A DNA stretch of 64,000 bases from Octopus sinensis (GCF_006345805.1 NW_021837025.1:308946-372945); one strand, 5' to 3'; shown: positions 29,776 through 57,963, counted from the first letter of the stretch. Program-made: numbers and translations. The notes: generated from the sequence alone by a model not told the origin.

Positions 29776-29823
29776 GACAAGACTATAATGTGATAATTTA
29801 TTTAAAATTTAATCAAGATTTTA

Positions 29824-31488: not shown

Positions 31489-31597
31489 CTTTATTGCTGT
31501 GGAAACAATTTTTTAATTAATTAAAGTTGAAAAATTATATTTATTTGTTAATATTTGGGTTTTTTACTAATAATATTTAAAAGTAATAAATATATAA
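31489..31597. promoter_or_regulatory. Putative bidirectional promoter TTC8/NDUFS2
   Basis: Only 109 AT-rich nt between divergent ATGs at 31488(-) and 31598(+). Function is inferred from geometry only. Confidence 0.45.
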
Positions 31598-33222
31598 ATG
31601 TTGTCCCCTTGTGGGTTTCGTCCCATCTTTATAAGGTACCGGTGAATTACTTAGACAGGACTCTGAAATGGATACCAGACAAGGAATATTATGACATGTA
31701 TAAACAGCCCGTATTTTTCCCCGACGAACGTTTCTCAATGTGGAAAAGACTTCCACCTAACAGTGGACTTTTTATTTAAATCTTCCAGAGGCGTCGATTC
31801 CTACAAACGCAGTGGTAAAAAACCTTACAATCAACTTTGGGCCTCAACATCCGGCTGCTCACGGTGTTCTACGGTTGGTCCTGACGTTGGACGGGGAGGT
31901 AATTTAAATAAAATATTTGAATTTTCAGTCGATGTGGTGATTGTTTTTTTAATTAATTTATTTAAAAGTATGTATATATAGAATGTCGTACGGGCTGATC
32001 CACATATTGGACTTTTGCACAGAGCGACCGAAAAACTGATAGAATACAAAACATACACCCAGGTAGGCCACAAATGAGATAAAAAAGGCTCTTCCCTACT
32101 TTGATCGACTGGACTATGTCTCTATGATGAGCAACGAGCAGTGTTTCGCTCTCGCCATAGAGAAATTGCTCGGAATTGACATTCCTCGGAGAGCAAAGTT
32201 TATTCGAAGTAAATTTATCCACAAAATATGACTCCCAGCTCTCTTTTCTGAGATAACCCGAATAATGAACCATTTGATGGGGATTGGGACACATATTTTG
32301 GATATTGGAGGTCTTACCCCTTTCTTCTGGATGTTCGAAGAGCGGGAAAAGATGTTTGAGTTGTACGAACGAGTTTCCGGAGCAAGAATGCACGCAAACT
32401 ACATTCGACCAGGAGGAGTCGCCCAAGTATTTAAAAAAATGTTAAAATAACCAAAAAGGATCTCCCAATTGGTTTTCTGGACGACACATTCGAGCTGTTT
32501 TCCAAATTTGTGCGTAGAGTGGACGAAGTGGACGAGTTTTTGTCGGAAAGTCGTATTTGGAAGTCGAGAACGGTGGGAGTGGGGACAGTGAGTGCTAAGG
32601 ACGCCCTCCTCTACGGATTCAGTGGACCGATGCTCAGAGGATCGGGGATCAAGTGGGATTTGAGAAAGGCCCAGCCCTATGAAATATACGACGAGTTGGA
32701 ATTCGACATTCCCATCGGGCAGTTTGGGGACACATACGACAGGTGCTTAGTTTTGAGTGGAGGGTTAGATATTTGGTGAGGATGGAGGAAATGAGGCAGA
32801 GTGTTCGTATAATTAATCAGTGTCTTGATAAGATGCCGTCGGGGGATATTAAAGTCGATGATTTGAAGATTGTGCCGCCCAGAAGAGGGGATATGAAGAC
32901 CTCGATGGAGTCGTTGATTCACCATTTCAAGTTTTATACGGAAGGATTTTCCGTGCCTCCTGGGGAGACTTACACGGCGATTGAGCATCCAAAAGTAGTG
33001 TAGGTGGAGGACGGTAGGGGGAGTTTGGGGTTTATTTGGTGTCGGATGGGTCGTCTATTCCCTATCGATGTAAGATCAAGGCGCCGGGATTTGCTCATTT
33101 GGCTGCATTGGATCATGTGGCCAAGAATCATATGTTGGCGGATGTAGTAGCCATTATTGGTTGATGAGTGTCTACTATTCTCAGGGACGTTGGATGTCGT
33201 GTTTGGTGAAGTCGACCGCTGA
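31598..33222 (+). CDS. NDUFS2: NADH dehydrogenase Fe-S protein 2 (49 kDa subunit), multi-exon
   Basis: [59 protein letters not shown] and C-terminal [22 protein letters not shown] after removing micro-introns such as 32995-33017 (23 nt) and 33160-33184 (25 nt). Confidence 0.97.
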
Positions 33223-33543
33223 AGACTAACACTAACCAGTGCAATAATATTATTTCATTTTCTTGTTTTCTTGTGGTAAATTCTGGCTAGTGAGGTCAGA
33301 GTATATTCTTGAGGGAATTTCATTTTAAGTTTAGAAATCTCATTTGCAAATAAGTCGATCGTATAAAATAATAGTATTGTTGTGACGAAATACCTAGAAT
33401 CAATATTTGAATCAATGTTGAACTATTAGTATTTATTGTTAAATCGTGATTTTTTTATATGTATATAACAGTTATGCAGTTATCTTACAATTTAGGCAGA
33501 ATAACCTTTCAAGAATACCAACTATTTTTAATCATATTCAAGA

Positions 33544-34458
33544 ATGTTTTGCCGCTATAAAAACAAACGACTGTTAGTTATATCTGTCTTCCTCATAATA
33601 CTATATTACCTTTCGTGGCCAAAAATGTCGAACAAAGTAATCAAAGAAGATTTTGTATTAGTTTCATGCTTCTACAATATTGGGAACTTTGAAAAGCCAG
33701 GTGGAGTCCGGAAGCCTTCCCAGTATTATGAGTGGATCAACAAATACGGGTTTGTCAAAAATCACATTGTGTTTTTCTCGGATAGCAAATCTATTCTCAT
33801 CCACCTGTTAAAGGTCCGAAAAGAAAAGCAAACCACCGCTGTTTATCTTTCTCGTTGGGAGTTGATTGGATTTAAAAATATTCGGAGAATACAGGAAATA
33901 TTCACTCTTCCGGGTTATAGAAAGTATCCACTCCAAACGGGGAATTTCCAGTATTCGGCAATCATGCATTCCAAACACGAACTGGTCGAAAGGGCCATTC
34001 GAATGTTTTCAAATACGTCCTCGTATTTTGCATGGGCAGATGTGGGGTTATTGCGTAATACCGACCCTCAAATGGACTATATTTTGACAACTTCCAAATA
34101 CATTGACAAAACCAGCATTTTCTGGTCCCAGGTAAAAGATTTTCATGAAAGATCTATTGAAATAATCACCAAAGACGCCCACGAGTGGGTTGGTGGTGCC
34201 ATGTTCGCTGGTCATGTCCAAGTCGTTCTTCAATTCTGCGAAGCGTACAAAAAATTATTTTATAAACTCCTGGACCTCAATTTAATCGCTACAGACGAAC
34301 AAGCTCTCTACATTCTCTTCACACGTCAAGGACGGGCTCTAACAGACAATAATGTCAGTATACACGTGTACAAATGTGGGTATTTTGGACTTTATACTCT
34401 CTTCTCAAATGTTAAAACTACTGACAAATGTGACTTGCATAGATTCTATTTTATATAA
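33544..34458 (+). CDS. HtrL/YibB (WlaTC)-family glycosyltransferase-like type II membrane protein, intronless
   Basis: 304 aa uninterrupted ORF with N-terminal TM anchor and motifs LVSCFYNIG, YSAIMHSK..LVERAI, YFAWADVG, VGGAMFAG and IATDEQ recalled for the HtrL_YibB family. Confidence 0.7.
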   Translation: MFCRYKNKRLLVISVFLIILYYLSWPKMSNKVIKEDFVLVSCFYNIGNFEKPGGVRKPSQYYEWINKYGFVKNHIVFFSDSKSILIHLLKVRKEKQTTAVYLSRWELIGFKNIRRIQEIFTLPGYRKYPLQTGNFQYSAIMHSKHELVERAIRMFSNTSSYFAWADVGLLRNTDPQMDYILTTSKYIDKTSIFWSQVKDFHERSIEIITKDAHEWVGGAMFAGHVQVVLQFCEAYKKLFYKLLDLNLIATDEQALYILFTRQGRALTDNNVSIHVYKCGYFGLYTLFSNVKTTDKCDLHRFYFI

Positions 34459-35279
34459 CAAATTAATTTTTATGTTCGATTGTCTGTTTTGTCAGAAATT
34501 AAATGGCGCTTCAAGTTCTATTGCCAATAAATTTAACGGATAATTCATACAAATGCGGTTTAGTTTTTAATATTTAAAAATTCTGAAATTCTGTGGTCAC
34601 AAAATACCACAAGGGGAACATAGTTTTGATAAATCTCTTAACGATAAGATTATTGGTTGCTCTGGCAATTTTATTGTTTGCTTCCATTGCAAGTTTTTAT
34701 TGTTTTAACAATTCCGGAAGAAATGAACGTTATATTAGTAAAAAATTGACCAAATAAACCATTGTAAGAATAATGTACTTTACAAAAGAAGATTTATTGT
34801 AACTAAGCAAAATATAAGTGCAATATATTTAAAATGTCAATGAAACAGTAATTCAAGTCATATTGTCACTGATAATTAAATATTTCAAGTCGAAAATCAT
34901 ATAAACGGGAATTAAAACTGTTAACTAAGTATGTTTAAAACTACTAATGATCAAAAGACGTTTCCATCAAAATGGAGATTTTTTGGAACAGCCATTGCTT
35001 CTCCCAGGCTCTCGGCGTCTTCAGAAGATCAGTTGCCCGATTATATTGTCACTAAAAGTTAAATATTTCAGGTCGAAAATTAAAAATGAAAACAACCATT
35101 TTTTTAGTTAATAATAGACTCTATATCAAATATGCGTTTACGGAAAGTAAAGTGGAAGGCAACGAATTGAAATAAAATTTTTATAAACTTTGGTAGTTTT
35201 CGCGAGGGAAATTATGAGTTTTATATAGACTTAATAATTAAAAAATATAAATTAAATAATAATTTAAATAAATTATTTA

Positions 35280-35746
35280 ATCTTATTTTGTTGTTTTTAT
35301 GGGTTTTTGCTGCAATTTAATCAATTAGACGATTTAATAACACGTTGTGGATTCTGTGGCATTATCTGGTTTCCACAATTTGTAAAAACAAAATTTTTAT
35401 CTGCCAAGCAATACAAAAAAATACCAAAATCTCAAAAAAGGTTAATTCTCAAGTCTGCCCAAGAAATATCTCCAAAAAACAAGTCCATTTTTGTATAAAT
35501 TTTATTTAAAATCAAAAGATGCGAGAATGTCTGAATTGTAAGCACATCACTTTGGATTTTATTTCAAAAAACAAAAAGGAAAAACTCCATGAAATAAGCG
35601 ACCAGAAAGTTATTTCTGCAAAAAATATTTTTCCTATGAAAACGGGGAATTCGGCCAAAAAACTGCATCAAAACCTCAAGAAAATATTTTCTTCCGATGC
35701 GATTTCAACTTCAAGAAATAATTTATTTAAATTTTTTAAATTTTAG
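35280..35746 (+). CDS. Small basic CxxC..CxxC protein, possibly Rpr2/Rpp21/C18orf21-like
   Basis: TRCGFCGIIWFP..FVKTK...SIFV|..ECLNCKH followed by a Lys-rich tail; start codon not resolved. Confidence 0.35.
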
Positions 35747-35885
35747 TTAATAAATTTTTTTAAAAACAATGTATTTCCAACCTAAAAATGAGTTTTAAAA
35801 TAATTTTGTATTTTTTTAATGGATAGTACGGAACGTATTATCAGATTTTGAAACAAAAAATAATAACGAGGCAATTTATATGTGA

Positions 35886-36260
35886 CTAGCTCGGCAGCTC
35901 GCTTCGCTCACCGCGACCTAGCTCCTGCGGAGGGCCTGTTTCATCAAACAACTATAAGTTTATGTAGATGTATAAAACTACCTGGTTTAATGTAACCCTA
36001 TTCTATCGCCTGTTGATAAACGATGTTTGTCGTCCGTCCTTCCTTGGCATATATGAATAAATTTTCTCTTCTGCCTACCCTCGAGCATCCCACATACAGC
36101 TGTCCATGTGAAAAGCACTCACTCTCTAAAAATAACCCAACTACCTTTAATGACTGTCCCTGGGCCTTGTTTATTGTCATTGCAAAACTCATCCTCAAAG
36201 GAAATTGCAGCCTTTTAAATCTAAATGGTAATTCATCATAAATTATCGGAATTCGTGGAA
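35886..36260 (-). mobile_element. Helitron 3' end with PIF1 helicase C-terminus
   Basis: FKRLQFPLRMSFAMTINKAQGQSL..FSHGQLYVGCSRV..TTNIVY*, followed by a GC-rich subterminal segment and terminal CTAG|T at 35886. Confidence 0.88.
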
Positions 36261-37879
36261 TATAAATGCGGCAGGCGAAGATGCGGCAGGCAGAGATGCG
36301 GCAGGCAAAAAAGCGACACACAAAAAGTTTTTCCTCCTTTGTTATCTATTAAAAAATTATTTTTGAATAATAAAAAATATTAGGAAAAAAAGGCATACAG
36401 AAAATAAATTCTATCTTACGAAAAACTTCTTTCTTAAGGTCGTCTTCCCTCCTTCGGTTATCTATTAAAAAATTATTTTTGAATAATAAAAAGTTTAGGA
36501 AAAGAGGCATACCGAAAATAAATTCTAGCTTTACGAAAACTTAACTAAATAGTTAATATTTTTACGCAAATTCTTCTGATTGCGCTGTCAATTGGTGGTA
36601 AATTGTGTTAATGATTGTGCTAATGTGGTTTCAACAACTATCAAAGTGTTTTTCAAAATCTGTTAATTGCACACTCTATTCAAGGTCGTGCAATCTGTAA
36701 TTGCACATTCTGTCAAAGTCAAATATGATAATAGCTTTAATTTTGATTCATGGTCGATAATGATATATGCATTTAATTTTAAAGAGAAAATAATAGGATA
36801 AAAAAAAACAATAACGAATTGTTGGGAAACAATTAATAACTATCGGCAACAGATTCCTAGTTCAAATTTTTTAGTTAACAGTGAGAAAGAAAATTTGGAC
36901 ACAATAATTGCAGACGTAATTGCTGAAAATGAAGAAGATATACTGTACCGAGTTTGTTCTTATGAAATGCATCTAGCTTCTTTAAATCGTTTTTGAGATT
37001 CCGCAAGTTCCAGAATTATAGAGCAATATTGGCTTCACAATAGTAGCACATAATCTAATGCAAATGTTAGGCGAAACATACTTTTTCTTATCCAGATGTT
37101 GTGCATTATTTAAAGAAGATGGTGGCAAGCATTTTCGGCATCCTTAAGTAGTAGGCCAAGTTTTTTATGTCTCCAGTCCTCGTCAGTTCTTGATTTTGTT
37201 TATTCGATTTGTGTACAGTCAGTCTTTAAAGAAGATTACGGAACAATTGGCCGTAAACTGGTGACAACCGACAATCTGGACGATGTTTAATGAGGGCCAG
37301 AAACAAGAAAGCGTGGGGGAAGATTAGGGAGGACGGCTCTAAGCATTGTTCAAGAAAAACCATTTTAGGGCGACGCGAAAGAGTTTTGACTAACTATAAA
37401 ATGATATCAAAGGACTGTTTCGATGGGATCTTCCCACTCCTTCACCAATTAGATGTCTGTTTAATCTGATATGTCTTTTTGATAGAGAGCAATATATTAC
37501 ACTGAGAAATAGCAATTTAATTCTCTTAGGAGTCTATTATATATTCTATTTTTTGTATTCTTATGTCTGTCTATAAATCTTTTGTTATGACCGGTATTTT
37601 CATGAAAGGAATTGAGACATAAGAAAAGTAGCTTTCATCAATTTTGTCACTATTGACAAAACCTGTACTTGGTATTGAAAATACTAAAATTGATTAAATC
37701 ACAGTAAAGAGCGACATAATTTGTCTAGACGGGAGAGGCACGACATGAACACAACTAAATGTCACAATTATACCATTTTGTGATTAAATTAATAATAAAC
37801 TATAAGTCATTAGTCAATTAACTTTAGCTTTTTAAGATTTAAAAATCAAAATATCCGATTTGTTTAAAAAATCAAGTTT

Positions 37880-38560
37880 TTGTTGTTTTTTGATGTATTT
37901 ATTAATACTCTTTTTTCATAAACTCTGGCCAGTGCCCTTCTTCGTGATAACCGTCGTATTTCGGTATGTAGCAATAAATTCTTATAACTTGGCTCATTTC
38001 ATCGCATAAATAATTAAAAATTCTAAAATTTTTAGATTGAATTTTTATATAATTGATCATTTTTATGAAATCATCCATAACTAAATTCAAAGCAAGCGGG
38101 ATAGTTTTTGAAACAAATACTTCACAATGTAAAAACAATGTGTAGAAAATATTTGATCATTATGTGCTTTTAGTTAAGAAACCTGAATTTACTTATATGA
38201 AAAACGATATACAGATCCAATAAGTCTTCTAGACATAGATGGTCCCCCATCTGTGCATACACCAAAACAATTTTTAAGGGAAATATTATGTTGATTAAAA
38301 TAATCAAATATCAACTTGTACATATCAATTGCAAAAGTAGTACTAACTAATTCCTTGCAAAAAAGAAAATGTTCAATATTAGTTTATGACTTTTTAGTAC
38401 GAATATAAGTAAGCAACTGTGAATTCCTGCAAATTAATTAGTCAATTAGGAATGAATATAAATTGTTTTTCATTATAGATACCACTTTTTCTTCAATATC
38501 AAATGACATTGTACTAATTATTCGACAAATATTATTGTAAGAAAAGGGAATTTTTAATAT
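37880..38560 (-). mobile_element. Degenerate hAT Buster/ZBED5-like transposase fragment
   Basis: NNICRII..MSFDIEE, FCKEL..CFGVCTDGG, FLHCEVFVSK..KMINYIK..RIFNYLCDEM; multiple frameshifts. Confidence 0.8.
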
Positions 38561-39938
38561 TTTTTCAAATTCCTCAACAAACATTTTTCGGACTATAATT
38601 GTTTTGTAATAAATAATTTTCAAGTTAAAAATTAAAAAAATGACGACGTCACTTTTCAAATCCGATGGGAGCTTCCAGTCCGGAAAACAAACCCGAAACT
38701 AAAAGAGTCAACAACAAATTCTCAAAAAACTAAAAAATACAAAAACTACATAATTTGGATAATTTGGCGATTTAAAAATAAATCTTGCTTTGAAATTTTT
38801 TATGGATTCTGTTATCCGCCATTTTCTGATAATCGTTACATTTTTAGGAATCACATTATTGACGAATATGGGAGACTTTACTGTATTCTTTTCAAGGTAA
38901 ATCAAGAACAATTAAATTTCTATCTATGAAATCAAATCTCAACTCAGCACATGTAAAATTGATCATACGAAAAAATACCTTCGTTATTAGTGTATTAATC
39001 GATGACTTTAAAACACATTTTAAAGAAACTTTATTGATTATGAAAATATTTTCGCCACTTATGGAAACAGATGCTCAACCGCTCCATATGTATATCATCC
39101 GAAAATACTTAAATACAGTCAGATGTACAACTAACTGCAGATAAAATACTAGATTGTTGGAATCAAATTCCACAATAGATAAATCTAAACTTGGTGTCTA
39201 ATGCTCAAGAAATGCATCAATTTTCGAATCAGCGTATGATATAAAACTCTTTTCAGCAAACTTACGCTAATAAAAAATCAACTATCAGCTTTATTCAACT
39301 TTTACGTACAGCGTTTAGTAAACGTTTCGACAAAATAATAGACCCCAAAAAGAATCAAGTCTTACATTGCTTTTTCTTTTCTTATTAATCGTATTACTTA
39401 TCTCTAATAACATGAAAATTTTGTGTGCAGTCTCAAAAGAAACTCTTAATTACTGAATTGGCCTTTGAGCCAAAAAATTGAGAATTCCTGGTATAAAGTA
39501 CAGGCTTTTTAAAAAGATTCAACAAAAAATCGTTATGAGCTCTCAGCAAATGATTTTACTCTCCAAATATTCATCAATAATAAACAGGTGAATTCGATTA
39601 TATTTATTTGAAATGGAAAAGAAATCATCAAAAAAAACTAGCTACTATGAACTGGCTCGCAGGATTGAAAGACAATTCCCGCGTAAAACAGCCAAATTAT
39701 TTTCATATTTAACTTAACTTTCTTTCCTAAAGGTTTTGAGGTTAATCAATTCCATAATTTTGCCTAAATGATTAAAAAGCTTATTTTGTAGTATAATTAG
39801 TCAGTTTAAAGCAGCAATAAATCTCAGGAACAAAAATTTCACTCCCAATAGGGACATGTTCGTCATCCAACAGTTTTACTTCTAGATTACCTACCAATAT
39901 CCAACAAATTTTGCTATCCAAGATTTATCTTTCAAATA

Positions 39939-41679
39939 CAGTCCGACGCCCAAAATGGGGCAGACCCCAGGGGTGGGGCACCCTCGGATTTTGGGGCACC
40001 CCCGCAATTTGGGGCACTTTATTCCAAAAGTACATTTTGGCAGAAAAAAAATAAAAATCGATAAAAAATTATGGAATTTTTGGGGCACCATAAAATCATT
40101 TATAAGGAATTAAAAATAAAATAAAATTATAATAAATTAATTATTTTTTGTTTTATTTTCAATTTATATTTTTATTGTTGTGGTTATGGATTACGAAACT
40201 AAATTGAAGATTGCTAAAGAAATTTTGAAGAAAAATTTATCTGAGAGGCAACTAATGAAAAAGTACAACACAAGTAAAGGAACAATATCAAGAATAAAAC
40301 GAACTATTGTACCTTTCTTGCAACACGGCAATACTATTTCTGAGGAATATGACACATTTAAAGCCGATAAAGATAAATTTGATGATCAAGTCTTTGAAAT
40401 ATTTCAAAGACTACGCGTAGATAAAATTCCGATTTCAGGCCCTATTTTGAAAAAAATTGCCTTAGTACAGCTTCAAAAATTGGATTTACTTCTTTTAAAG
40501 CTTCCAATGGGTGGCTTGATAGATTTAAATTGCGGCATGAACTTCAATTCAAGTCAATATGTGGTGAAAAAGCTTCATGTGATTTATCTTATGTGAAAAA
40601 TTATTTTGAAAAATATGACCAGAAGTATTAAAATATGGACCTGAGAATATATTTAATTGTGATGAAACTGCGCTTTTTATAAAAAGAACTCCTCAAAAAT
40701 CATTTGTTGAACAAGGCGAACCGTGTTTTGGTTATAAACAAGGGAAAGAAAGACTCACTGTTCTTCTATGCTGCAGTTTAATCGGGGAAAAACTTAATCC
40801 ATTGATTATTGGAAAATATAAAAAACCTCGGTGTCTAAAAAATTTTGATGTTCAAGATTTTGGGTTATTGTATTCATCTTCTCAAAATGCATGGATGACT
40901 GGAAAGACTTTTATGAGTTGGCTTACACTTATAAATGAATCGTTTTGCAAAAACAACAGAAAAATATTATTAATACTTGACAATGCGGGATGCCATAAAA
41001 CTGCCGAATGTTCGAACATCGAATTTTTATTTTTGCCGAAAAATACAACGCCCTATTTACAACCTTTGGATATGGGAATAATCAAGATTTTTAAAGATTA
41101 TTATTCCTCTTTCTTAATGGAATTTTTATGTTTTCAAGATTTCGAAAACGATTTTACACATTCTATTGGTAAATTAAATTTGCGTCAGGTTATGATGCTA
41201 ATTTCAAAAGGATGGGAGAAAATAGATGCTAAAAGTATTGTTAATTGTTGGAAGAAAATCGACAGGAACCGTGATTCTTATGCAACAAAAAAAACTGTCT
41301 AACAGATGAACATTTAGATCAAGTTGTTAACGAAACAATTGATGGAGAATGCGAAGACATGAACAATAATGTTTATGATACATATTCAGAACCGAAAATA
41401 GTGAAAATGTCGTAGCAAAAACAAAAGATCTGCTAACAATTTAGAAGAAAAAATTTCTAATGTTGCACCAAGTATCTCCGAGATTTTTTTGATTTTCGGC
41501 TGAAATTGACGAACAATATCAGACAAAACTCTACAAATAAAAAGAAAATAACTGAATATTTTAGTAAAATGTTTTTTGATGTTTATTAATGGTTTTAATT
41601 TTTAAAAAAATAACAAACCCCTGTTTTTGGGGCACCCCCGCATTTTGGGGCACTTGGTGCCCCATTTGGGGTCGGACTG
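39939..41679 (+). mobile_element. Full-length pogo/Tigger-like transposon (family A), frameshifted transposase
   Basis: TA|CAGTCCGACGCCCAAAATGGGGCA ... TGCCCCATTTGGGGTCGGACTG|TA; HTH-psq, CENP-B HTH (IPISGPILKK, FKASNGWLDRFK), NCDET, ILDNAGCH and LQPLDMG motifs. Confidence 0.93.
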
Positions 41680-41681
41680 TA

Positions 41682-43140
41682 GTAGCAGTACGATCTCATT
41701 CGCAAGTAGGTCGTATTGTGGAGTTTTTTCACTTCCACCTTTTGCAAGTTGTCTTGCGATGTAATTCCTACTTCAATGATTGTTATCATGTTTTCTTTTT
41801 TGTCATAGACAATTGTATCTTGTTTATTGAATTGTATCTTTAGTTCTGTTTTTATCGTAGTGTCCACTCTGATTTCTACACATCGTTTGATTGTGATAGA
41901 CTGGACAGAGTGTGATTTTTATCATTTTTGTTGATTTTAATCCAAAAAGGCGACATAAGTGGACATGCAAACATCTTACTACTTCATTGTGTCTCTTCGT
42001 GTACTCATAATTCAGCATTCTGTTGCTTCGTGTGGCGATTTCGGTCGACTAACTCTTAGCCAATTTGCAGTGGGGACAATTTACATCTCGTTCTGACCAG
42101 AACAGATTTCTATCTTGCAGTAAGCAATATAGACCCTCACTCCTTGGCTTATATTGCCTTTCTGCAACCACAAAGAAGATTCTTTAATATCGGAATGAAT
42201 GTTTTTGTTGCATTTGCAAAGTGATGAATGTAAACTTTTCGTTTCGATTATATCAAGAAGGTATTTGAGTTGAATTTTCTTTAAATTTTTTATGTTGATT
42301 TCATTGTTATATTTGGTGTATTTATGCTTTAAGTAGTCTGCGATGGTGACCAAATGGGTTTTCATTAAATTTTCAGTCCGCAGAATATCAGCCTTTTTCA
42401 GACAGCCTACCGACTTTCTTTTTATTTCAGTATAGAATTCAAGTAACATTCTTTCGCTCTTCATCGATATTGATTCCAATCTTCTTCTAAGGTATCACGA
42501 GGGAGATATAGCCTCTGACAATTTGGAGGTCTCAAATGTATGTGATATGAATTAAGTTGTAGACGAATTTCTCTGTCAATTACTTCAAACTCATCAGGTT
42601 CTATGTCTATCAATCCAATGTAATAATTGTAAAGAGTCTTTATTGACTTGGATGTTTGGGATTTTCTTTGCAGGCGGCCTTTTGGATAAAAAAACTCGTT
42701 TTCGCATTCTCTAAGGAAGGTTAAGGAATTACCATTATTTTCCGTAGTCTGCTTTTCAGTGTATGCTTTTGACAGACTGTTAGCAATAGATTTATTCTGC
42801 CCTAATTTAGCCGAAAATGCATCTCGTATAGCGTTCCATCCCCCTCTGGGCATACGGTTCATGCGCGTTTTTATTGACTGAACGACGGAGTACACCCACT
42901 CTCCACGATCTTCGCATGTTGTCCCGTCCATAATGGCACGGAGAACAGAGATTTTAGATGATTCAGAATGGAGACGATTTATCTGTGTGCTAAAATCCCC
43001 CAGGCAGACTGGCCTATCCCTCTTTCCGTATTTATAGTTGCTTCTCGTGGGCCCATAGGTAGATTCGACATATGTGTTAAATCTGACATTTGGCAATAGA
43101 AGATCAATTACTGCTGCTATGATAATATGCATTTAAAATT
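41682..43140 (-). mobile_element. Right-arm copy of the deleted R4/R2-type RLE element, 3'-truncated at the pogo TIR
   Basis: Mirror of about 13300-14722; ends at KYDLLANEIVLL immediately against the pogo end. Confidence 0.85.
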
Positions 43141-44985
43141 TTAAAATAATTTCAACAAACAGAATTTTTACAGAGAAAGAAATCGTAAAAAAATATGGAA
43201 ACTCGTATTTCGGGACAAAAATTTTCTATAACTACAGATTTCTGTTTTTTAATCCATATTGTTTTTAAATAAACTGATTAAGCCATTGAGTGATTAAAAA
43301 TCAAAGACTTTTAACTTCATTGTACTCATAAAACTTGCTACTTTTAAATAATCTAAAATTTAGGTTCTAAACAAAGCTTTACTTTCTATAATCTCTATTT
43401 ACCCGAAAAACAGTCTAACCGGGGGTGCCCTTCCAAACAGAGGTCTGGTTCAAACTATTGAATTATAGTTTATTTAATTCAAATTTTGGTTTGCTTTGCA
43501 AACAAAGAACTCTTTCACATCTTCCAAAATGTTTATATTGCGATAATACAATAAGTTGTGCTTTTAAAATCGCCTCAAAAAGTGAAGGTGCCCCAAGGCG
43601 GGGTTTTTGTTGACTATTATTAGAATGCTGCTGTAATGCCAGTCGAAAAAATTCTGCTTATTAAAAAACCTTGAGAATTTATTTTAATTTTTTTGTGAGA
43701 ACAGAAAAAGTAAATAACTCAAAAAATAGTCAAAAGCCTGAGGGTCAGCTCAACGACCCCGCATTAAATATTGAGTGGCAGTATCCTGCAAAGCACGGCG
43801 AACGAGATTCGCTGAAAAAGGCAGCTCGTCTCCTTCTCTTTTTTTGGAGAGATTCTCATACCAATAACAGTGAGGAGTTGAGTCGCAGCCTTGTCGACGA
43901 TTCCTGAGGATTTGAAGGCAAGGGGGGCAAATTCAAAAGATTCTTCAACATAGCACTTCCAGAATTGGATAATAGCCAAGCTGGCCTTGGAGAGCCCGAC
44001 GCAAAATAAGTGAAAATACAGATCGCAAGAAGAGTACAAGCGGCCCTTCTTGGGGAATTAAGTAATTTACTTAAATAAAATTCTGAAAATTGTTATTCGT
44101 TATCTGTTTTTTTATAAATTTTGTGTGAAAGACAAATATTAGCAAATTCATGTTTTAAAGAACATTATTTCCAAAAAATTATCTAAAAAATTCTTTTTAG
44201 GTGTCGTGCATCTTAGTAAAAATTTGCTCACTTTAGTGGACGATGTTACTCAGTCCACGTCCTAGCTGCCCGCAAGGCAAGTAAAATCTCTTGAATAGTC
44301 ATTAAATCCATTTGAATATATTTTCTCAGCAAACAATTAATCAAAGGAAATGCTGTTGTATCTAATAACCACAATATTGTCATTCATGTTAAGATAATAA
44401 TGGAAACCGAATAATCTATGCAAAAAGAAATTTTAGTATATTTAGTATAAAGTTTCACAAAACTGTTATCAAATTGGAATCCTCATTTACAAGGCCCTTC
44501 GACAATATTTACAAAGCAATCGAAGTGGCACCAAGTTGATTATATTTCTAAACAATCAGTTTTGTGAGTAGGTTCTTTATTAAAAATTATATCGTGAAGA
44601 TGGCTTAGTGCTCTTAAATAACTAAATAATGATTTTTTGATGTCTGAGTAAGATTATTAGAGATCTTTATATTGGATAAGTATAAATATTAGAAAATCAG
44701 TTATCTTGGAATGTTTGTTAGGATGTTTTAATTATCAATTTTTAAATTTTTATCGGATAAGAAATATTTCAAGATATAATGATTAAAAAAGTTTCTTATG
44801 CACCTAAAGTTAAAAACTAATAAAAAATTCATCATGCCAAAAATGGAATATTTTAACCACACATTTAAAAAATAATGGTCGAATAAGACAATTGTAAGCT
44901 ACAATTGTTCTTATCAAACACTTATCCCGCAATAATTAATTTTGGTATAAATTGGATAAAAAATAATTTCAATTGGATAGCTAAA

Positions 44986-45393
44986 ATGAAAATTGCATTT
45001 TGTATCTTTGGAATATTCAGTATTCTATCTAATATTATTTACCTAGTGATATTCTTATTCAATCAAGCAACTGCCGCTGGTATTCCAGAAACAGGGGCAG
45101 CTACAACAACGGCAACAGATGAAACAACAAGCACAGCAACAGAGGCAGCTACAACCACAGCAACAGAGGCAGCTACAACCACAGCAACAGAGGCACCTAC
45201 AACCACAACAACAGAGGCACCTACAACTACAGCAGCATCAGATACGACTGCTACACCTACAGCTACAACAGCAACGCCAGTAACAAATGCAACAACACCA
45301 AACGGAACCTTGCCAAGTTCGGAGACATCTAAAATTGTTGGGAAAATAAGCATTATTGCTGCAATTGCTCAGCTCATGTACGGGCTCAACTAA
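44986..45393 (+). CDS. Thr/Ala-rich mucin-like putative GPI-anchored protein, right-arm copy
   Basis: Mirror of 9732-10139 with a different repeat composition (2xEAA+2xEAP). Confidence 0.75.
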   Translation: MKIAFCIFGIFSILSNIIYLVIFLFNQATAAGIPETGAATTTATDETTSTATEAATTTATEAATTTATEAPTTTTTEAPTTTAASDTTATPTATTATPVTNATTPNGTLPSSETSKIVGKISIIAAIAQLMYGLN

Positions 45394-45827
45394 AAAAATA
45401 ATTTGCTAATATTTTTTCTTTTCCTCTACTAAATGATGATTTAATTTTAATGCTTTGAATTATCAGGAAATTTTTCGGTTTGACACTTCCGGTTAAGCTC
45501 AACCGCTTACCAAATTAATAACGTAAATAACCTCAAATTGTGATTTGAATAAAAAAATCATGAGTTATCTGGCATGTCTTCAAGACTAAAAACACATTAA
45601 AAACAAAAATATATCTAACATTTATCAAAACAGTGACATTTAGAACAAAGTATGGCGATTTTATGATTTATTAGTTCAAATTGTAAAATTAGATAAATTA
45701 AACAAGTTTTTCTCTTTCTGAGTGACAAGGCCGATTAGCGTTGATCAAATGAATCTCTCAATATATTTTTTTAATGAACTATAATACTTAAAAATAAAAG
45801 TAACGGGCGATAATTCATACACAATTT

Positions 45828-46810
45828 TCATGGACAAAAATGATATTGAACTGCCTGCGCATAAGATGGCCTGACAGTTTCCCCAAAAGATCCCCAACGA
45901 CACTCTTTGCAGAAAATAAAGAGTCTCGTTGGATTTTTATTTTTCTTACCGATCTTCGTTAGCCGACAAAGGAAAGAAAGCGATTCCGGACCGATGACCC
46001 AGAATGTCTCCACAGCTATTGATTTCTGGCCAGGGACGAGTATTTTGTTGACTTTCCATGATCCACGTGTCTTCCGCCAAGCCAGGCTCGGCAACTAACA
46101 AGATCAGATTGTTGGGAGAGAAATTGTTAGAGCATGTCGCGTCCAAGATGAGGCATTTCCCGTGGTCGAAGGGAAATGTTGTCATGCCATTTGGATGTTT
46201 TCCATCTCTGCAATCCAACCCGACTGGTTCCAACACATTAGAGAATCCCGCAGATGCCAGGGCGCGGCTCACCACATCATTAAGACCAAAGTGGCGAGAG
46301 AAAGATAGCGGATGTAGTCATAAGGTATCAATCGTCTGACGACAGCGGAATTAATGCTCACGGCAGATGTTCAATCCAAGGTGCAGAGAAACTGCGACAC
46401 GGAGACATTCGTTATCCAGTAATGTGTCATCTGACGCCATCGGGATAGCTGTCAGCAGGCTCCTGAATACTTTTGAGACTCTGCGAGCAAACAGACCAGG
46501 CGGTGTTGATCAAGTTTACACTTGAAGAGCAAAATGTTGTAGTCGGAAAAAAATTGTGTCCAATTTCCGCTGTTTGGTTAAATCATCAGGAACCTTGAGA
46601 CCATTAGCCACCAGCATTTAACAGCCGAAGAGAACTCATGGTTCAAAGGGAATTCAATAGTGGATTGGAGAATTTGGGGACAAAGATCACCAAGAAAAGT
46701 AAAAAATCTCTACGAGACTTGTCATCTTCTTCAAAGAGTCTCGTTGGCGATCGTCCGGGGAACTGCCCATATTATCTTATGCGCGGGCAGTTCAAATAAT
46801 TTTTGTCTTT
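45828..46810. mobile_element. CRE-like retrotransposon fragments, right-arm copy
   Basis: Mirror of 8335-9310; same translated motifs. Confidence 0.72.
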
Positions 46811-47139
46811 GTTTTTAGTAATATCTAATGAAAAATTGTTAAATTAGATAAATTAAACAAACAAGTTTTTTCCTTCTGAGTGATCAGGCCAATGATCGTT
46901 CATCAAATGAATTTCTCAATCAAAAAGAAAAAAGTTTTTTGAGCCATCTCAAAAATTTAACTGATGATATGCAACTTAGGGATAACTTTAATTCGAATCC
47001 TCAACTAATTGGTATAATAACAGAGCACGTAGAATTACATCTTAAGTTGAAGAGGATAAGTATACACAGATTAGTACACAATTGTAAATGTAGTTTGGTT
47101 TGAGAAATTAAGATTGGAAAAAATAGTTGATTAGAAATT

Positions 47140-47683
47140 TTAACTAGTTGGTCGTGGAATGGGATGGAACTTTTTTACAAACTCGATATAGTCGAGATTA
47201 CCATCCACGTCTGGTTCAGTGACCTTAAGGAAGGTTCCGATCTCATCGGCGTTGTACTCCTCTCCCACAGTTGTCAAGACATGCCGAAGGAGGTCGGTTT
47301 GAATGAACCCATCTCCTTCTTTATCGATAACTCGAAAGGCAGCTAAAATTTCTCTTATTTTTTCTGGTTTTCTGTCGAGGCTTTGAAGAGCAAAAACCAG
47401 ATCAGGAAATTTAACAACTCCGTTTTCTAGGATTAAACGTTTAAATAACTTTTCAACAATAATTCTTCACATAAGATTTTTATTTGGCGTTCCTTTGGGT
47501 TGTATCCGCACATTCTCATCACCTGAGGGAGCTCAGCGATGGTTATCGAGTCATCCTCTGACTTGGAGGAATATAATTTGAAATTCTGTCGAAACCCTGA
47601 GTACTGAATTTTAAAAATTCACATTGAAGTTCTTCTTCCACGAAATAATCAGAAACAGGGCTCTGTTGACTAACATTCGTCAT
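47140..47683 (-). CDS. Calmodulin-like EF-hand protein, right-arm copy
   Basis: Mirror of 7430-7973. Confidence 0.85.
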
Positions 47684-48056
47684 TTTTCTATGGAAATAAA
47701 TTTAGCTATTAAATTATTTAATAATCATTTTCTTGCATTACAATTAAATATATTATTTAAAAATATAAAAAAATAAAGAGACAAGACATTTCTAAATAAT
47801 CAAATTTACTAAAATTGTCGAAAATAAATCTCGAATAAATATTAGCTAAAATAAATTTAGATCTCAGAAGATACGTCAAACCATGTAATGATTTATTTTA
47901 ATGTGACTAAAGATAGATATTCAAAGACGAATAAGAAATGTAAGATTTAAGTTAAATATAAACAACAGTTTGTTAGTTTGAATAGTATTATAAATTATTT
48001 ATTTTTAAAATATTTTAATTTAAAAATTATATACACGTTATTGGTTTAGTGGTGTC

Positions 48057-49895
48057 ATGAGTAATAGTCATCAAATATTCGATAAGTTAGTAAAAAAATA
48101 CAATATTTTATAATAAAGGTTGCTTTCAAAAGAATCACAAAATAATGAAATATCGAACTACGAAATCAATGATATTGACCTCGATCCAGCCCATCATTCC
48201 TTGATGCTCAAAAAACTTAAAGCCGACGTTCAAAAACCAAAAAAACCCGAAATAATACAACGAACTGAGGCAGGAAAAAAAATATCAGAACACGGAATAC
48301 CACCAAGTACACATTCAATCAAAAATACGAATTTCAGGTGAACAAATCACCCTAACAGACCTAATTTCAACCAAAACGGCACAAAAGCACGCCTTACGAC
48401 CCATTCCACCTCCAAAACCTAAAAAAACTTTATCAACGAACCAAAAAAGAAAGGTCCCTCAAAAATAGTAAAAAATAGACCGAAAGACAAGCTTTGTATG
48501 AACGAGCAAAGCAGGATGTGAATTTATGGCAACCCACTGTCGATATGAATAGAAAGGTTTGGAAATACCCCAATTCCTAGTCCGACCAAGTTGTGTACCC
48601 TCTGGAACACGTGATCCCCAGAAATGAGAGGATTGACCCCTACAAGGCACTATGTCGGACTGAGGACTGTGAAATGGAGAGGGAAATCCAATCAGTGCTT
48701 TCAGCTAACAAAAATACAGTCAAATCAGCTTTGACTCTCACAAAAAATGAAAGAAAGGTCCTAAAGGCAATGGATGTTGAAAGCGCTCGAAAAATGCAGT
48801 CAGAATTGGCCCGTCTTCGGTCACTTCAAGCAAAATATGAAAAGAAGGCGAAATGGGCCAAGAAAATCAAAAGTAAAAGTTACCGCCGCATTACTCGGCA
48901 CGAGAAGAGGAAGAAAGATGAGAGGACCCTGGGAAACCTCAAGGAACAGGACCCTGAGGAGTTTTCCCGACGTGTTCTCCAACTCCGAACTGACCGAATG
49001 AAGGAAAGAATGAGTTTGAAGCACTCAGCGTCCACAAAATATGCACATAACCAAAAAATGTATGCCAAATACAACGAAAGTGTATGTGAAATATTAATTT
49101 GGAGGCTCGGGAGTTTATTTCTCAAATGAGTTCAAAGAAGAGAGATTTGGTGGATAGGACGGGGGCGTGGGAGGACGAGAGGGCTGAAATGAACCGCTGT
49201 TTGGACGAGACGGAGATATATAAGCCAGTGGTTGCCCCGAAGGAGTCGAAGAGGGGTTGGGACGAGGAGGAATTTGTCAACAAAGAACTGACTATTCCAG
49301 TATTTTTATTATGTGAGAGTAGGAGCCAATAATTGATGTTGGGAGGAGTAGTCTCAAGTTGGGGGACTTTAGTGTGGAGACTGGGATGTCCGTGTGTCCC
49401 AATGAGCAGCCAAACTTTGAGGATATTGCTGGGAATGTGACATATGGAGTCGATGTGGTCGGGGAGTTCAAGGATGAGAAGCAGAAAGTTGTTGAAGACG
49501 AGAAAGAAAGAGATTTGGAGGCTTTTCTTCCTGGGTGGAATTCGTGGGCTGGCCCTGGAATTAAGAAAAATAAAAAACGTGAGTCTCAGTATACTGTGAA
49601 AGCGCGGGAAAATCCTCGCCGTGATTCTGGGTTTGGGAATGTGATCATATCAAAGAAACAGCCTACATTTGAGGGGCATCGAGTTGTGATAATTTATGTT
49701 AGTTGTTAGGTAAGACACGTTCCCTTCCCGTTTTTGAGTGTTGCCCAGTTTGAGGCGAGTTTGAGGACTCCGATTGACCGAACGTGGGTGCCGGAGAGTG
49801 CATTTAGGAAAATGATCAAATCGAGGGTTGTCACTAAATCGGGAACCATCATCCAGCCCATTTGCAAGAAAGCTGTCAGACCTAATCGAACGTGA
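48057..49895 (+). CDS. UTP14: UTP14, right-arm copy
   Basis: Mirror of 5213-7051; ORF-track translations are identical except the first exon (MSNSH vs MSKSH). Confidence 0.93.
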
Positions 49896-51389
49896 TTATA
49901 TTTTCTCCATTTTAATGAAAATTGTTTTATACTGTCAATTAATTTACTTTCTTCAATAGTTCTGCTGTTAGTGTTCCTGGACAATTTTAAACTCTTTGCT
50001 AGTATTTGTTGACATTACAAAACTCATTTATAATCTGGTTTCGAGATTCTTTTGGATCGATATGTATAATTCTGACGGAATCAAATAATGTCGAACCTAA
50101 TTAGCTTTATGTGAACGACATTCGGGTGATTTGTGCTGAACAATGAATTAACTTGGTCTTAAATTTACTTTATAGTTCTGGTAACGACAAAATGGCACTA
50201 AATAGAATTGGACTTGTACGGGAAACTCCGGAAAGCGGTTGCAATCTTTTTAGGCGACAGAAAGTCGATTTTTCCAGCTGTGTCCTAAATAATTTTTTGC
50301 TATGAAAAACTTTCTACAAAATTATAAAAAGTGCACTACAGTACGCCCCCAGTTGAGGGCAGACCTCAGGGGTGGTCCACTTTCGGTTTTGGGGCACCCA
50401 CGCATTTTGGGGCAGTTTTTAAAAATAGTCAATTTTTCAATATATTATTTATTTTTGATGACCCTGGTATGGGGCACATATTTAATTTATTTAAAATTAC
50501 AAATGGTACTATCATTTTAAGTTTTATTTTTATTCTTGTATTGTTCTTAAAAAGAATTCAAATAATTTTTTAATTACAGTTACTATTTCTCGCATTAAAC
50601 AAAATTTTGCTTGTTATTTTTATGTGGGATTAACTGAATGTGATCGAAACGAGGAATTATACGATCCAAATAATCAATCTTTTACACAAGATAAATCGTC
50701 TTCACTAGATAGATGAGTTTTTGAAACTTCTACGTTTGAGAAATGAATTTTTTCCAATTCTTAAAACCATGTTGAAACTTATTGCAATACAAATTTTTCA
50801 CACATAATAAATTACGAATTATTTAAAGCATCAAATGGATGGCTCGACCAGTTCAAAAAGAACTCAAGTTGCTATTCAAAACTATAATTGGAGAAAAGAA
50901 TTCGTCTAACCTTTTTTCAATATTCAAAAATGCCTGGAACTATGCGGGTTGTGAAGCTCAGCAAAGAAATTCTTGAAAAAATCAAAAAATCAGAGGAAAC
51001 CAAGAAGAACACACATTAGACGACAATCCCAACAGAAAACAACGATTTAGGCTAAATGAAATTCCAGGAGTAATTAATAAATGTGTTTATTGCCAAGCAA
51101 ATATTAATTCTATAATGTTAGGCTAAGAAATTAATGACGATTAAGCCACAAATAACGCTAATCAATCATCGGTTAGGATTTGAGTTAGGGATAGGGATGG
51201 GCAAAGCTCCCATAGAGTTATGGATTAGGGTTAGGAGTAGGCGAAGCTTTTATATGGAATCTAGAATTTTTTTCTATTTTATAATGTAAATTTTAATTAT
51301 TATCTCGATTTTAACGGATTTTTTACAATTTTAAATCATTATTTGATGTTGGTTTTTCGAAATCCTGCTTTTTTCAACAGGTACCAAAA

Positions 51390-52127
51390 TTATTAAAAAT
51401 GTGTTTAAAGTGAGACTTGGAAAAAATTAACGTGTATTTTGTATGGCAATATTGCTTAAAATTTGAAAGTGTCCATTTATCCGACTGTGACATATATTAA
51501 TTTAAAAGTTCAAATCTCCTCGGTGTTTAAAAAATCTTAATGAATTCGACAAATATTATTAGGACAAAATCACTTATGATGAATATGAATCAACAAATCA
51601 TCAATTAAGGAGTCATAAACATCATGAATTCTCTAGAAGATAATATTGTTAGTACATTCCCACAAAGTTTAAAATTCTATTAAGAATTTCAAAAAAACCT
51701 ACCAGGAGAACTGGAAAAAAACCAATTCGGTGGGGAAATTACTGATTATTTTTAATAGAATTTTTTTGTTGGACGCAATTTCTGGCTTTATCAGCACAAG
51801 ATGAACAACTAATTACGCATGGCCAACTGTTTACACTTTTTGACATTGTGAAAGTCAAACTAAAATTTGGACATAATGGAGTATCCAGACACTGGTGTTG
51901 CGGAAGTCCTTGGAGACCATGCACGCCGAGACAAGGCACTGGTTATTAATAGTTGTGGAGGAGGTATCCTAAATCTAGATTTTTTTAACTTGGACGCAAT
52001 TGAAAACTTGAGTATTTTAATTTCGCAATTCGATTTGAAGTATTTTTATGAGAGTTTAGACAAATTCAAAATTGATTTTTATCCGATTGATGAAAACTCA
52101 GCTTACTGTGAATGTCCACATTACTAA
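51390..52127 (+). CDS. Possible micro-intron gene of unknown function, right-arm copy with open 3' exon
   Basis: ORF 51867-52127 stays open (YPDTGVAEVLG...AYCECPHY*); the upstream exon joins are tentative. Confidence 0.33.
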
Positions 52128-52542
52128 ATACAAATTTAGTGCCAAAAATAAAATATACATAGATAACTTTGTTCAAAAAAAGATATTTGTTGCAGTTTGA
52201 TAAATTCGAGTTGCCATTCTATTTAAATTCTGAAATAATTAACAATTTATCCAAAAATCAAGTTGATGAAAAAAAGCATTTTTATTTAAATATGCCAAAG
52301 GAGATACCCGTAGATTAAAAATAATTAGTTATGAAATTTATTGTCAAAATTATTATTTGAAGGTAAAATGTAACCAGTTTCCCACGTGTATTCATTCCTT
52401 CATATCACATCTTAGACTTTCTAAGAGATTAGTAATATTTTACAAGCTAAAAGACTTTAACTTTATAAAAAATGATTATAAATTATGTTTCTAATTATAT
52501 ATATCTTAATTTTCTGAGATTAAATTGTTTAAATCACTTAAA

Positions 52543-53144: not shown

Positions 53145-53252
53145 ATTGACTGTTCTATTTCTGACACTCACTTTACATATTATTCCAATACTTTCTGATG
53201 TTATCATAAAGTTATATAAATTGTCAAAAAAATGTTCAATTGGATATCAAAA

Positions 53253-54016: not shown

Positions 54017-54261
54017 CTTTAAAACACGTTTTTTTAGAAATATTAAACTAAATAAATTAGTAATTTTTTTAATTATTACTTTTTATTATATTCAATTTTT
54101 AATTATACAAATAAATTACACGACATTCCTTTGTAAAATGGATCAAATACTTTTTTTTATTAGTCAATAAATTGTTATAAATATTTTTTAATTATTATAA
54201 TAATATAATTATTGATTGGTAAACTAAAATTGAAAATAAATATTTTATAAAGTGTTATAAA

Positions 54262-57891: not shown

Positions 57892-57963
57892 TTTCTGCTT
57901 CTGTGATCATGTGCGATGGAAAATATTTTTGTGTGTTTTTAATTTTACACATTTTATTTACAA

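What the first reader, a model, noticed from the sequence alone, without database searches (positions are those of the whole stretch)
41640..41730. Inner breakpoint of the duplication coincides with a pogo TIR
Seen: the right arm stops within 1-3 nt of the TA|CAGT end of the pogo element at 39939-41679 (left arm ..GTACTGCTAC-ATAGTG; right arm reverse complement ..GTACTGCTAC-TA-CAGTCCGAC). The other side of the pogo does not continue the interrupted RLE element, so this is not a simple insertion. Established: Tc1/mariner-pogo ends can cause adjacent deletions, inversions and duplications through alternative transposition. Inference: a cut-and-paste transposase created or trimmed this duplication.
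Basis: partly seen in the sequence, partly recalled or inferred. Interest (0 to 1): 0.75.

Follow-up and report, generated by a model that had tools for sequence, protein, structure and literature searches.

The report
Pogo transposon at a doubtful duplication edge
The end of an inverted repeat in an octopus contig lies exactly at the tip of a pogo transposon, but the repeat is probably the animal's two chromosome copies stitched into one contig, not a duplication made by a transposase.

Summary
A 1,741-bp pogo element (39939-41679) has short terminal inverted repeats (TIRs), a TA on each side, and DDE_1 plus HTH_Tnp_Tc5 domains. It abuts the inner end of the right arm of a large inverted repeat (1-14722 versus 55078-41682). 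Homology to the left arm stops at 41682, two bases beyond the TIR. The other pogo flank is unrelated to the interrupted RLE retrotransposon.

The window is the last 64 kb of Octopus sinensis contig VCDQ01003981.1, so the right arm runs towards the contig end and no outer breakpoint is visible. This assembly has about ten times more duplicated BUSCO genes than sister octopus assemblies. Arm divergence is very patchy: 0 to 18 substitutions per 500 bp.

A one-step hybrid-end transposition that yields arm-spacer-pogo-inverted arm gives, by my derivation, a dicentric or acentric chromosome. Its viable product is an inversion.

My best reading (about 0.5) is that the arms are two haplotypes threaded into one contig at a pogo-bounded structural difference or at the pogo repeat itself. 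A real duplication made or trimmed by pogo remains possible (about 0.25). Reads are needed to decide.

The parts
1..14722 (+). Left arm of the inverted repeat. It carries a Utp14 exon and candidate ALG13-like and LYAR-like exons (motif reading only; no Pfam match). It begins at window base 1, so it probably continues upstream of the window.
   Evidence: Self-BLAST. Utp14 Pfam hit 1.8e-25 for 5979-6515(-). Substitutions per 500 bp range from 0 to 18, index of dispersion 6.5.
11951..13231 (-). Insertion found only in the left arm: a 5'-truncated non-LTR retrotransposon fragment in antisense orientation, with an RVT_1 domain and an (AACT)n-type tail. It is flanked by the 7-bp target duplication ACGAGTT (11944-11950 and 13232-13238).
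   Evidence: RVT_1 4e-13. The right arm has the uninterrupted site CGAAATACGAGTTTCCA.
13239..15060 (+). Left-arm copy of an RLE-bearing non-LTR retrotransposon. It is 5'-truncated, decayed, and complete to its 3' end. The 5' limit is uncertain; family homology starts at 13328 at the latest.
   Evidence: 92% nt identity to another O. sinensis copy, L001 5860-6582 vs 14338-15060. Conserved CCHC, RHNEV and PD...E...K motifs, and an RT domain upstream in relatives.
14723..15060 (+). 3' part of the RLE copy that has no counterpart in the right arm or anywhere else in the window.
15061..39936 (.). Single-copy spacer between the arms. It holds a RhoGAP-like exon, a TPR gene, an HtrL_YibB-like gene at 33625-34458, a second pogo-like family, an RT fragment and a Helitron/Pif1-like fragment.
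   Evidence: No other annotated protein at 90% identity or more to the spacer gene P0117.
39937..39938 (.). TA flanking the left TIR.
39939..41679 (+). Pogo-superfamily DNA transposon, 1,741 bp, with TIRs CAGTCCGAC(G)CCC(A)AAATGGGGCA. The transposase ORF is broken by only three frameshifts, each at an A-run.
   Evidence: TIRs. Frames. DDE_1 1-177/177 at 1.1e-36 and HTH_Tnp_Tc5 at 2.7e-10 on the bridged protein.
41680..41681 (.). TA between the right TIR and the right arm. This is the junction of the finding.
41682..43206 (-). Right-arm copy of the RLE element, cut off at the position equivalent to 14722. It carries extra indels relative to both the left copy and the outgroup copy.
41682..55078 (-). 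Right arm of the inverted repeat, the part that can be compared within the window.
55079..64000 (-). Probable continuation of the right arm up to the contig end (record base 372945). Its counterpart would lie upstream of the window and could not be fetched.
   Evidence: Window = record 308946-372945 of a 372,945-bp contig. ORFs continue in the same orientation.

Best explanation
The 'inverted duplication' is most likely an assembly product. The left and right arms are the two haplotypes of one locus of a diploid Octopus sinensis, threaded head-to-head into the end of a single long-read contig. The switch point is the pogo copy.

What is probably real is the integration-type junction pogo TIR-TA-RLE on one haplotype. 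It arose in one of two ways.
(a) A roughly 27-kb inversion of the segment 14723-41681 on one haplotype. This could come from hybrid-end (sister-chromatid) transposition of the pogo, or from recombination between two inverted pogo copies. The assembler then entered the collapsed spacer from haplotype A and left it through haplotype B.
(b) A heterozygous pogo insertion into the RLE copy, with the assembler switching inside the 1.7-kb repeat to the pogo at the end of the spacer.

Shown: the junction, the non-matching flanks, the contig-end position and the patchy divergence. Inferred: the allelic nature of the arms and which sub-variant applies.
For: 1. The window is exactly the last 64,000 bases of contig VCDQ01003981.1 of GCA_006345805.1. 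The right arm heads into the contig end and no outer breakpoint is assembled.
2. This assembly has 5.2% duplicated BUSCO genes against 0.5% in O. vulgaris and 0.4% in O. bimaculoides, and only 86% of it lies in chromosome-scale scaffolds (PMC10700109). About nine in ten duplicated single-copy genes here would therefore be assembly-specific, and the arms carry Utp14.
3. Arm divergence is strongly over-dispersed. Substitutions per 500 bp run 0,0,1,3,2,14,18,2,0,1,0,0,1,0,7,5,12,16,4,7,7,11 (index of dispersion 6.5, p=6e-19), with a 1,518-bp identical run. This fits recombining alleles and rejects a single-age duplication without gene conversion.
4. False 'heterotype' duplications arise in regions of raised heterozygosity (PMC9516828).
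5. The arms differ by a presence/absence TE insertion with an intact 7-bp target duplication, as expected for an insertion polymorphism.
6. By my derivation, one-step hybrid-end insertion or recombination between inverted repeats that gives arm-spacer-pogo-inverted arm produces a dicentric or acentric chromosome. The viable product is an inversion, and read from the other side that inversion gives exactly spacer-pogo-TA-inverted arm.
7. In the RLE segment, polarised with another family copy, about 9-10 indel events are derived in the right arm and 0-1 in the left, while substitutions are symmetric at 13 versus 9. The three pogo frameshifts sit at A-runs. Both hint at a poorer consensus around the junction.
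Against: 1. No reads, depth, k-mers or second assembly could be examined, so all evidence is circumstantial.
2. Arm divergence (1.0% substitutions and 1.9% with indels in the main block; 4-9% in 11039-13767) exceeds the k-mer heterozygosity quoted for O. sinensis (0.34%, PMC12564688). It is close to the 1.22% of O. vulgaris.
3. Long reads normally span a 1.7-kb repeat, which weakens sub-variant (b).
4. Typical false duplications are separated by gaps or lie on different contigs. This one lies inside a gap-free contig (no N).
5. Patchy identity is also what gene conversion between the arms of a real palindrome would give.
6. Most right-arm indels cluster in one 0.5-kb tract and could reflect a single conversion event.
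Confidence: 0.5

Rival explanations
1. A real inverted segmental duplication whose inner edge was made or trimmed by the pogo transposase. One route: the right pogo end integrated into a TA of the RLE copy on the sister chromatid, followed by limited re-replication and end joining, as in the maize Ac composite-insertion model. The other route: a pogo inserted normally into the right-arm RLE copy of a larger pre-existing inverted duplication, and a hybrid-end event then deleted everything between its left end and a new TA target at 39937-38.
For: The TIR-TA-RLE and spacer-TA-TIR junctions both have integration geometry, and the flanks are not contiguous. The transposase ORF is nearly intact, so the family may be young. 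Sister-chromatid transposition gives inverted duplications in maize (bioRxiv 10.1101/2020.01.07.897926). Aberrant transposition is reported for Tc1-mariner impala and Sleeping Beauty (PMC1592236). The adjacent-deletion route yields a viable chromosome.
Against: It needs two or three events. In the Ac sister-chromatid model the element ends sit at the outer target junction and a footprint sits at the centre, not at the inner edge next to a 25-kb spacer. No second pogo end, footprint or matching TA is seen at the left-arm boundary. The junction is 1 nt short of a canonical TA integration. The prior for a real duplication in this assembly is low, and the contig ends before any outer breakpoint.
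Confidence: 0.25
2. A chimeric contig. The right arm is a true second copy located elsewhere in the genome, next to its own pogo insertion in the RLE element. The assembler joined it to this locus through the shared pogo repeat.
For: The join is exactly at a repeat, the flanks do not match, and the contig ends soon afterwards.
Against: It requires both a real dispersed duplication of at least 13 kb at 98% identity and a misjoin that happens to land 25 kb from the other copy. Long reads usually span 1.7 kb.
Confidence: 0.1
3. A real inverted duplication formed by a mechanism unrelated to transposition, such as fold-back priming or template switching. The pogo later inserted at the pre-existing boundary by chance.
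For: TA on both sides is what a simple insertion leaves. The joined flanks give a plausible empty site, TTTCAAA-TA-GTAGCAG.
Against: The boundary and the insertion would have to coincide within 0-2 nt, about 2e-4 for this element. There is no microhomology at the junction.
Confidence: 0.05

Closest known systems
False heterotype (haplotypic) duplication in long-read assemblies (Ko et al. 2022, PMC9516828)
   Same: Two copies about 1-2% apart in a heterozygous diploid. The region is more divergent than the genome average, lies at a contig end, and sits in an assembly with excess duplicated BUSCO genes.
   Different: The copies are inverted, lie inside one gap-free contig, and are separated by 27 kb of single-copy DNA. 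The switch point is a transposon tip. Read depth and k-mer criteria could not be tested.
Alternative transposition of cut-and-paste elements (maize Ac/Ds sister-chromatid and reversed-ends transposition; P-element hybrid element insertion; impala in Fusarium; Sleeping Beauty clusters)
   Same: An element end is joined through its target dinucleotide to a sequence that is not its original flank. Inversions, deletions and inverted duplications are known outcomes.
   Different: Only one junction is visible. There is no reciprocal junction, second end or footprint. The pogo sits at the inner edge rather than the outer edge. The junction is 1 nt off a canonical TA integration. No experimental precedent was found for pogo-superfamily elements.
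Inversion by ectopic recombination between inverted transposon copies
   Same: It leaves a transposon whose two flanks come from different original insertions, each with its own TA.
   Different: The second pogo copy expected at the other breakpoint is not in the contig.
Pogo superfamily (Tigger/pogoR-like) transposons (PMC7386202)
   Same: DDE_1 plus HTH_Tnp_Tc5 domains, TA flanks, TIRs shorter than 40 bp that start with CAGT, length 1.7 kb, and about 29 residues between the second and third catalytic D.
   Different: The ORF is interrupted by three frameshifts in this assembly. The family within the superfamily was not resolved.

Membership tests
Pogo superfamily DNA transposon | DDE_1 catalytic domain | tested here: met
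   PF03184 at 4e-30 on the raw ORF. Full model 1-177/177 at 1.1e-36 on the frameshift-bridged protein.
Pogo superfamily DNA transposon | CENP-B/Tc5-type helix-turn-helix DNA-binding domain | tested here: met
   PF03221 HTH_Tnp_Tc5 at 2.7e-10.
Pogo superfamily DNA transposon | Short terminal inverted repeats and a TA target-site duplication | tested here: met
   TIRs of about 24 nt. TA at 39937-38 and 41680-81. Because the flanks are not contiguous, the two TAs need not be one duplication.
Alternative (hybrid-end, sister-chromatid or reversed-ends) transposition product | Element end joined through a canonical target dinucleotide to a non-native flank | tested here: inconclusive
   TIR-TA-RLE is present, but the RLE side is 1 nt short of the TA at 14724-25 in the left copy and in the outgroup copy. 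A single-base consensus error is plausible, because four single-base indels are derived in the right arm within the last 385 bp.
Alternative (hybrid-end, sister-chromatid or reversed-ends) transposition product | Reciprocal junction with the other element end, or a second copy, and the matching target duplication | tested here: not met
   There is no TIR at the left-arm boundary 14722/14723. The only other exact 9-mer TIR matches lie at a Utp14 exon. The outer breakpoint lies outside the contig, so this feature is only untestable there.
Alternative (hybrid-end, sister-chromatid or reversed-ends) transposition product | Junction present in the organism (reads or PCR) | not testable with these tools
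   Look-ups of junction-spanning ORFs in public assemblies found nothing.
False heterotype duplication | Located at a contig end or gap in an assembly with excess duplication | tested here: met
   The window ends at the contig end. Duplicated BUSCO genes are 5.2% against 0.4-0.5%. There is no N gap inside the window.
False heterotype duplication | Divergence between copies at the level of heterozygosity | tested here: inconclusive
   1.0% substitutions, very patchy. Quoted heterozygosity is 0.34% for O. sinensis and 1.22% for O. vulgaris.
False heterotype duplication | Half read depth and haplotype-specific k-mers on both copies | not testable with these tools
   No reads were available.
RLE-bearing non-LTR retrotransposon (the interrupted element) | C-terminal CCHC motif followed by a PD-(D/E)xK restriction-like endonuclease, downstream of a reverse transcriptase | tested here: met
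   Invariant C135, H137, C138 and near-invariant H147, C152, then RHNEV, near-invariant D222, and invariant E237, K253 and K256 in an alignment of 12 relatives. Relatives P0074 and P0082 carry PF00078 upstream. The window copies are 5'-truncated and lack the RT. No Pfam or PDB sequence match was found for the endonuclease part.

The most novel reading that the evidence does not exclude
A young, nearly intact pogo-superfamily element in Octopus sinensis carried out hybrid-end (alternative) transposition. That event either created a real inverted segmental duplication of at least 15-22 kb that includes Utp14, or produced a roughly 27-kb inversion now segregating in the population. This would be a natural, sequence-resolved case of alternative transposition by a pogo element in an animal.
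Probability: 0.2. Interest if true: 0.55.

Novelty: new member of a known kind. Interest (0 to 1): 0.27.

Why it matters
If the junction is real, it would be a clean natural example of a pogo-family transposon end marking a rearrangement breakpoint in a cephalopod. That would extend a mechanism known mainly from maize Ac/Ds and Drosophila P elements. If, as I think more likely, the duplication is an assembly product, the value is practical. Inverted repeats at contig ends of the O. sinensis reference should not be read as segmental duplications or gene gains (here Utp14) without read support. Transposon-bounded 'breakpoints' in such assemblies are also a signature of haplotype switches.

Tried and rejected
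1. Fetching the DNA upstream of the window, to see whether the duplication reaches the contig end and to find an outer breakpoint. Exact-product look-ups of window ORFs failed. Ten further candidate ORFs are not in the collection. A search with concatenated exon-like ORFs from 54523-55994 found no homologue. The other genes on the contig (P0118, P0121) lie 230-290 kb away.

2. Read-level proxy for the junction. Both junction-spanning ORFs (41595-41867 minus, 41589-41843 plus) are absent from public assemblies, including Logan.

3. A simple pogo insertion into the RLE element is rejected. The left flank has no similarity to 14723-15100.

4. A microhomology or fold-back junction is rejected as unsupported. 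No shared bases lie at 41681/41682, and a break exactly after the TA is not where Tc1/mariner-type transposases cut (established knowledge).

5. An 85-bp MITE with the same TIR at 6446-6530. It has no TA flanks and overlaps a Utp14 exon ORF, so I did not accept it as a family member.

6. A PDB sequence search for the RLE protein gave no match.

7. Other pogo copies in fetched O. sinensis DNA. None was found in L001, and L003 and L004 were not readable in the script.

8. The excess of right-arm indels as proof of poor consensus. I kept it only as a hint, because most events cluster in one 0.5-kb tract.

Full report
**What is in the sequence.** The window contains a large inverted repeat. Self-BLAST gives 1-11029 vs 55078-44096 (98.1%), 11039-11950 vs 44113-43200 (95.6%), 13232-13767 vs 43206-42677 (91.1%) and 13758-14722 vs 42646-41682 (98.7%). 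Between the arms lie about 25 kb of single-copy DNA and, directly against the right arm, a 1,741-bp element at 39939-41679.

That element has imperfect terminal inverted repeats (TIRs) of about 24 nt, CAGTCCGAC(G)CCC(A)AAATGGGGCA, and a TA on each side. Its DDE_1 domain scores 4e-30. The three reading frames show that the transposase is broken by only three frameshifts, each at a run of A. Bridging them gives a full-length DDE_1 match (1-177/177, 1.1e-36) and HTH_Tnp_Tc5 (2.7e-10). These are the defining features of the pogo superfamily (PMC7386202).

**The junction.** The left arm reads ...GATCGTACTGCTAC|ATAGTGCCAAAG. The reverse complement of the right arm reads ...GATCGTACTGCTAC|TA|CAGTCCGACCCC. 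Homology stops at 14722/41682, two bases (the TA) from the TIR tip.

The interrupted sequence is a decayed, 5'-truncated copy of an RLE-bearing non-LTR retrotransposon.
- It is 92% identical in DNA to another copy in the same genome (L001).
- Relatives conserve CCHC, RHNEV and PD...E...K motifs, and some carry a reverse transcriptase upstream.
- The left copy runs to the family's 3' end near 15060.

The last 338 bp (14723-15060) have no counterpart anywhere else in the window, and the pogo's left flank is unique.

One detail was not noted. Both the left copy (CTAC-A-TA-GTG) and the outgroup copy (TTAC-T-TA-GTG) have one base more than the right arm (CTAC-TA). The junction is thus 1 nt short of a canonical integration into the TA at 14724-25.

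**Where the window comes from.** A spacer gene (33625-34458) is recorded on Octopus sinensis GCA_006345805.1 contig VCDQ01003981.1, which is 372,945 bp long. The fetched locus is identical to window 23625-44458, which places the window at record 308946-372945, the last 64,000 bases of the contig. The left arm starts at window base 1.

Two consequences follow. The duplication probably extends upstream of the window. The right arm runs towards the contig end, with at most 8.9 kb left, so no outer breakpoint is visible. I could not obtain the upstream DNA.

**How the arms differ.**
- Substitutions are extremely patchy. Per 500 bp they run 0,0,1,3,2,14,18,2,0,1,0,0,1,0,7,5,12,16,4,7,7,11 (index of dispersion 6.5, p=6e-19), with a 1,518-bp identical run.
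- The left arm alone carries a 1,281-bp antisense non-LTR fragment with an intact 7-bp target duplication.
- In the RLE segment, using L001 as outgroup, substitutions are symmetric (13 derived in the left arm, 9 in the right). Nearly all indel events are derived in the right arm, including four single-base indels in the last 385 bp before the junction.

This pattern rejects a single-age duplication that simply drifted. It fits either recombining alleles or a real palindrome with arm-to-arm gene conversion.

**Mechanistic reasoning (inference).** A TA directly outside the TIR is what strand transfer into a TA target leaves. It is not where a Tc1/mariner-type transposase cuts. Both pogo junctions therefore look like integration junctions, but to two unrelated flanks. 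That pattern has three classical sources:
- recombination between two inverted copies;
- hybrid-end (sister-chromatid) transposition;
- an assembler switching between two copies.

I worked through the hybrid-end case for a single element. Inserting the right end in inverted orientation into the left flank of the sister chromatid gives arm-spacer-pogo-inverted arm only as a dicentric or acentric chromosome. Inserting it into the element's own chromatid gives a viable inversion of the segment 14723-41681, flanked by two pogo copies. Read from the other strand, that inversion contains exactly spacer-TA-pogo-TA-inverted arm.

In the documented maize case of sister-chromatid transposition, the element ends sit at the outer target junction and a footprint lies at the centre of the duplication. 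That is not the layout here. A real duplication would need extra steps, namely re-replication and end joining, or a pre-existing larger duplication later trimmed by a pogo-adjacent deletion.

**Assembly context.**
- The O. sinensis assembly has 5.2% duplicated BUSCO genes against 0.5% in O. vulgaris and 0.4% in O. bimaculoides. It has 20,491 contigs, and only 86% of it lies in chromosome-scale scaffolds (PMC10700109).
- Haplotypes retained as false 'heterotype' duplications are the main class of duplication error, and they favour regions of raised heterozygosity (PMC9516828).
- The arms include a Utp14 exon.
- Against this reading, the quoted k-mer heterozygosity of O. sinensis is 0.34% (PMC12564688). 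That is lower than the 1.0% substitution divergence of the arms. There is also no gap in the window.

**Verdict.** My best explanation (about 0.5) is that the two arms are the two haplotypes of one locus, threaded into one contig end. The switch would occur at a pogo-bounded heterozygous structural difference, meaning an inversion or a pogo insertion in the RLE copy. The missing base at the junction would then be a consensus error or a private mutation.

The rivals are:
- a real inverted duplication created or trimmed by the pogo (about 0.25);
- a chimera with a true paralogue located elsewhere (about 0.1);
- a coincidental insertion at a pre-existing boundary (about 0.05).

None can be excluded without reads. 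The claim that cut-and-paste elements of this group cause such rearrangements has support for impala and Sleeping Beauty. I found none for pogo itself.

**Novelty and interest.** Either way this belongs to a known kind of event: a transposon-bounded rearrangement, or a haplotypic false duplication. Interest is low to moderate. It would rise if reads confirmed a natural alternative-transposition product of a possibly active pogo element in a cephalopod.

Noticed in passing
window 6446-6462 and 48646-48662: The 17-nt string CAGTCCGACATAGTGCC lies at the edge of a Utp14 exon ORF. Its first 9 nt equal the pogo TIR tip and the next 8 nt equal the RLE sequence just after the breakpoint (14723-14730). 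An imperfect inverted copy of the 9-mer lies 67 nt away (6522-6530). There are no TA flanks and the orientation does not fit an insertion junction. It is unexplained and possibly chance.
   Followed up: partly
window 11951-13231: A 5'-truncated non-LTR fragment with RVT_1, found only in the left arm, with an (AACT)n-type tail and an intact 7-bp target duplication ACGAGTT. It is absent from the right arm, so it inserted after the arms diverged or is an insertion polymorphism.
   Followed up: yes
window 40455, 40625, 41285 (approximate): The three frameshifts that break the pogo transposase all lie at A-runs (A7, A4, A8), and no stop codon lies within the frame segments. They may be long-read consensus errors, in which case the copy could be intact and the family young.
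   Followed up: partly
window 13232-13767 vs 43206-42677: This 0.5-kb tract is only 91% identical between the arms. That is about as far as either arm is from an unrelated family copy (90.1% and 87.3% to L001), while the next kilobase is 98.7% identical. It suggests ectopic gene conversion from another RLE copy or a very old haplotype block.
   Followed up: partly
window 13239-15060 and one search hits: The nearest non-octopus relatives of this RLE retrotransposon family are microsporidian (Hamiltosporidium, Vairimorpha apis, Astathelohania, Nosema granulosis; 40-47% amino-acid identity). Two hits are labelled as a Paraclostridium MAG and look like contamination. This may reflect horizontal transfer between microsporidia and animals.
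   Followed up: no
window 23766-25130 (-) and 59448-60134 (+): A second, different pogo-like family with DDE_1 and HTH_Tnp_Tc5. The two copies are about 71% identical in DNA. The first copy is annotated as two separate genes in the public gene set (178 aa and 159 aa).
   Followed up: partly
window 4672-4771 and 50339-50436: A solo end of a related pogo family (CAGTACGCCCCCAG...), flanked by TA and present in both arms. No partner end was found.
   Followed up: partly
window 33625-34458: An intronless gene of the bacterial-type HtrL_YibB family. Four paralogues at 50-81% identity exist in O. sinensis, two of them on the same contig (P0118, P0121).
   Followed up: partly
window 35998-36321 (-): A Pif1/Helitron-like helicase C-terminal fragment, next to a tandem repeat at 36327-36542.
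   Followed up: no
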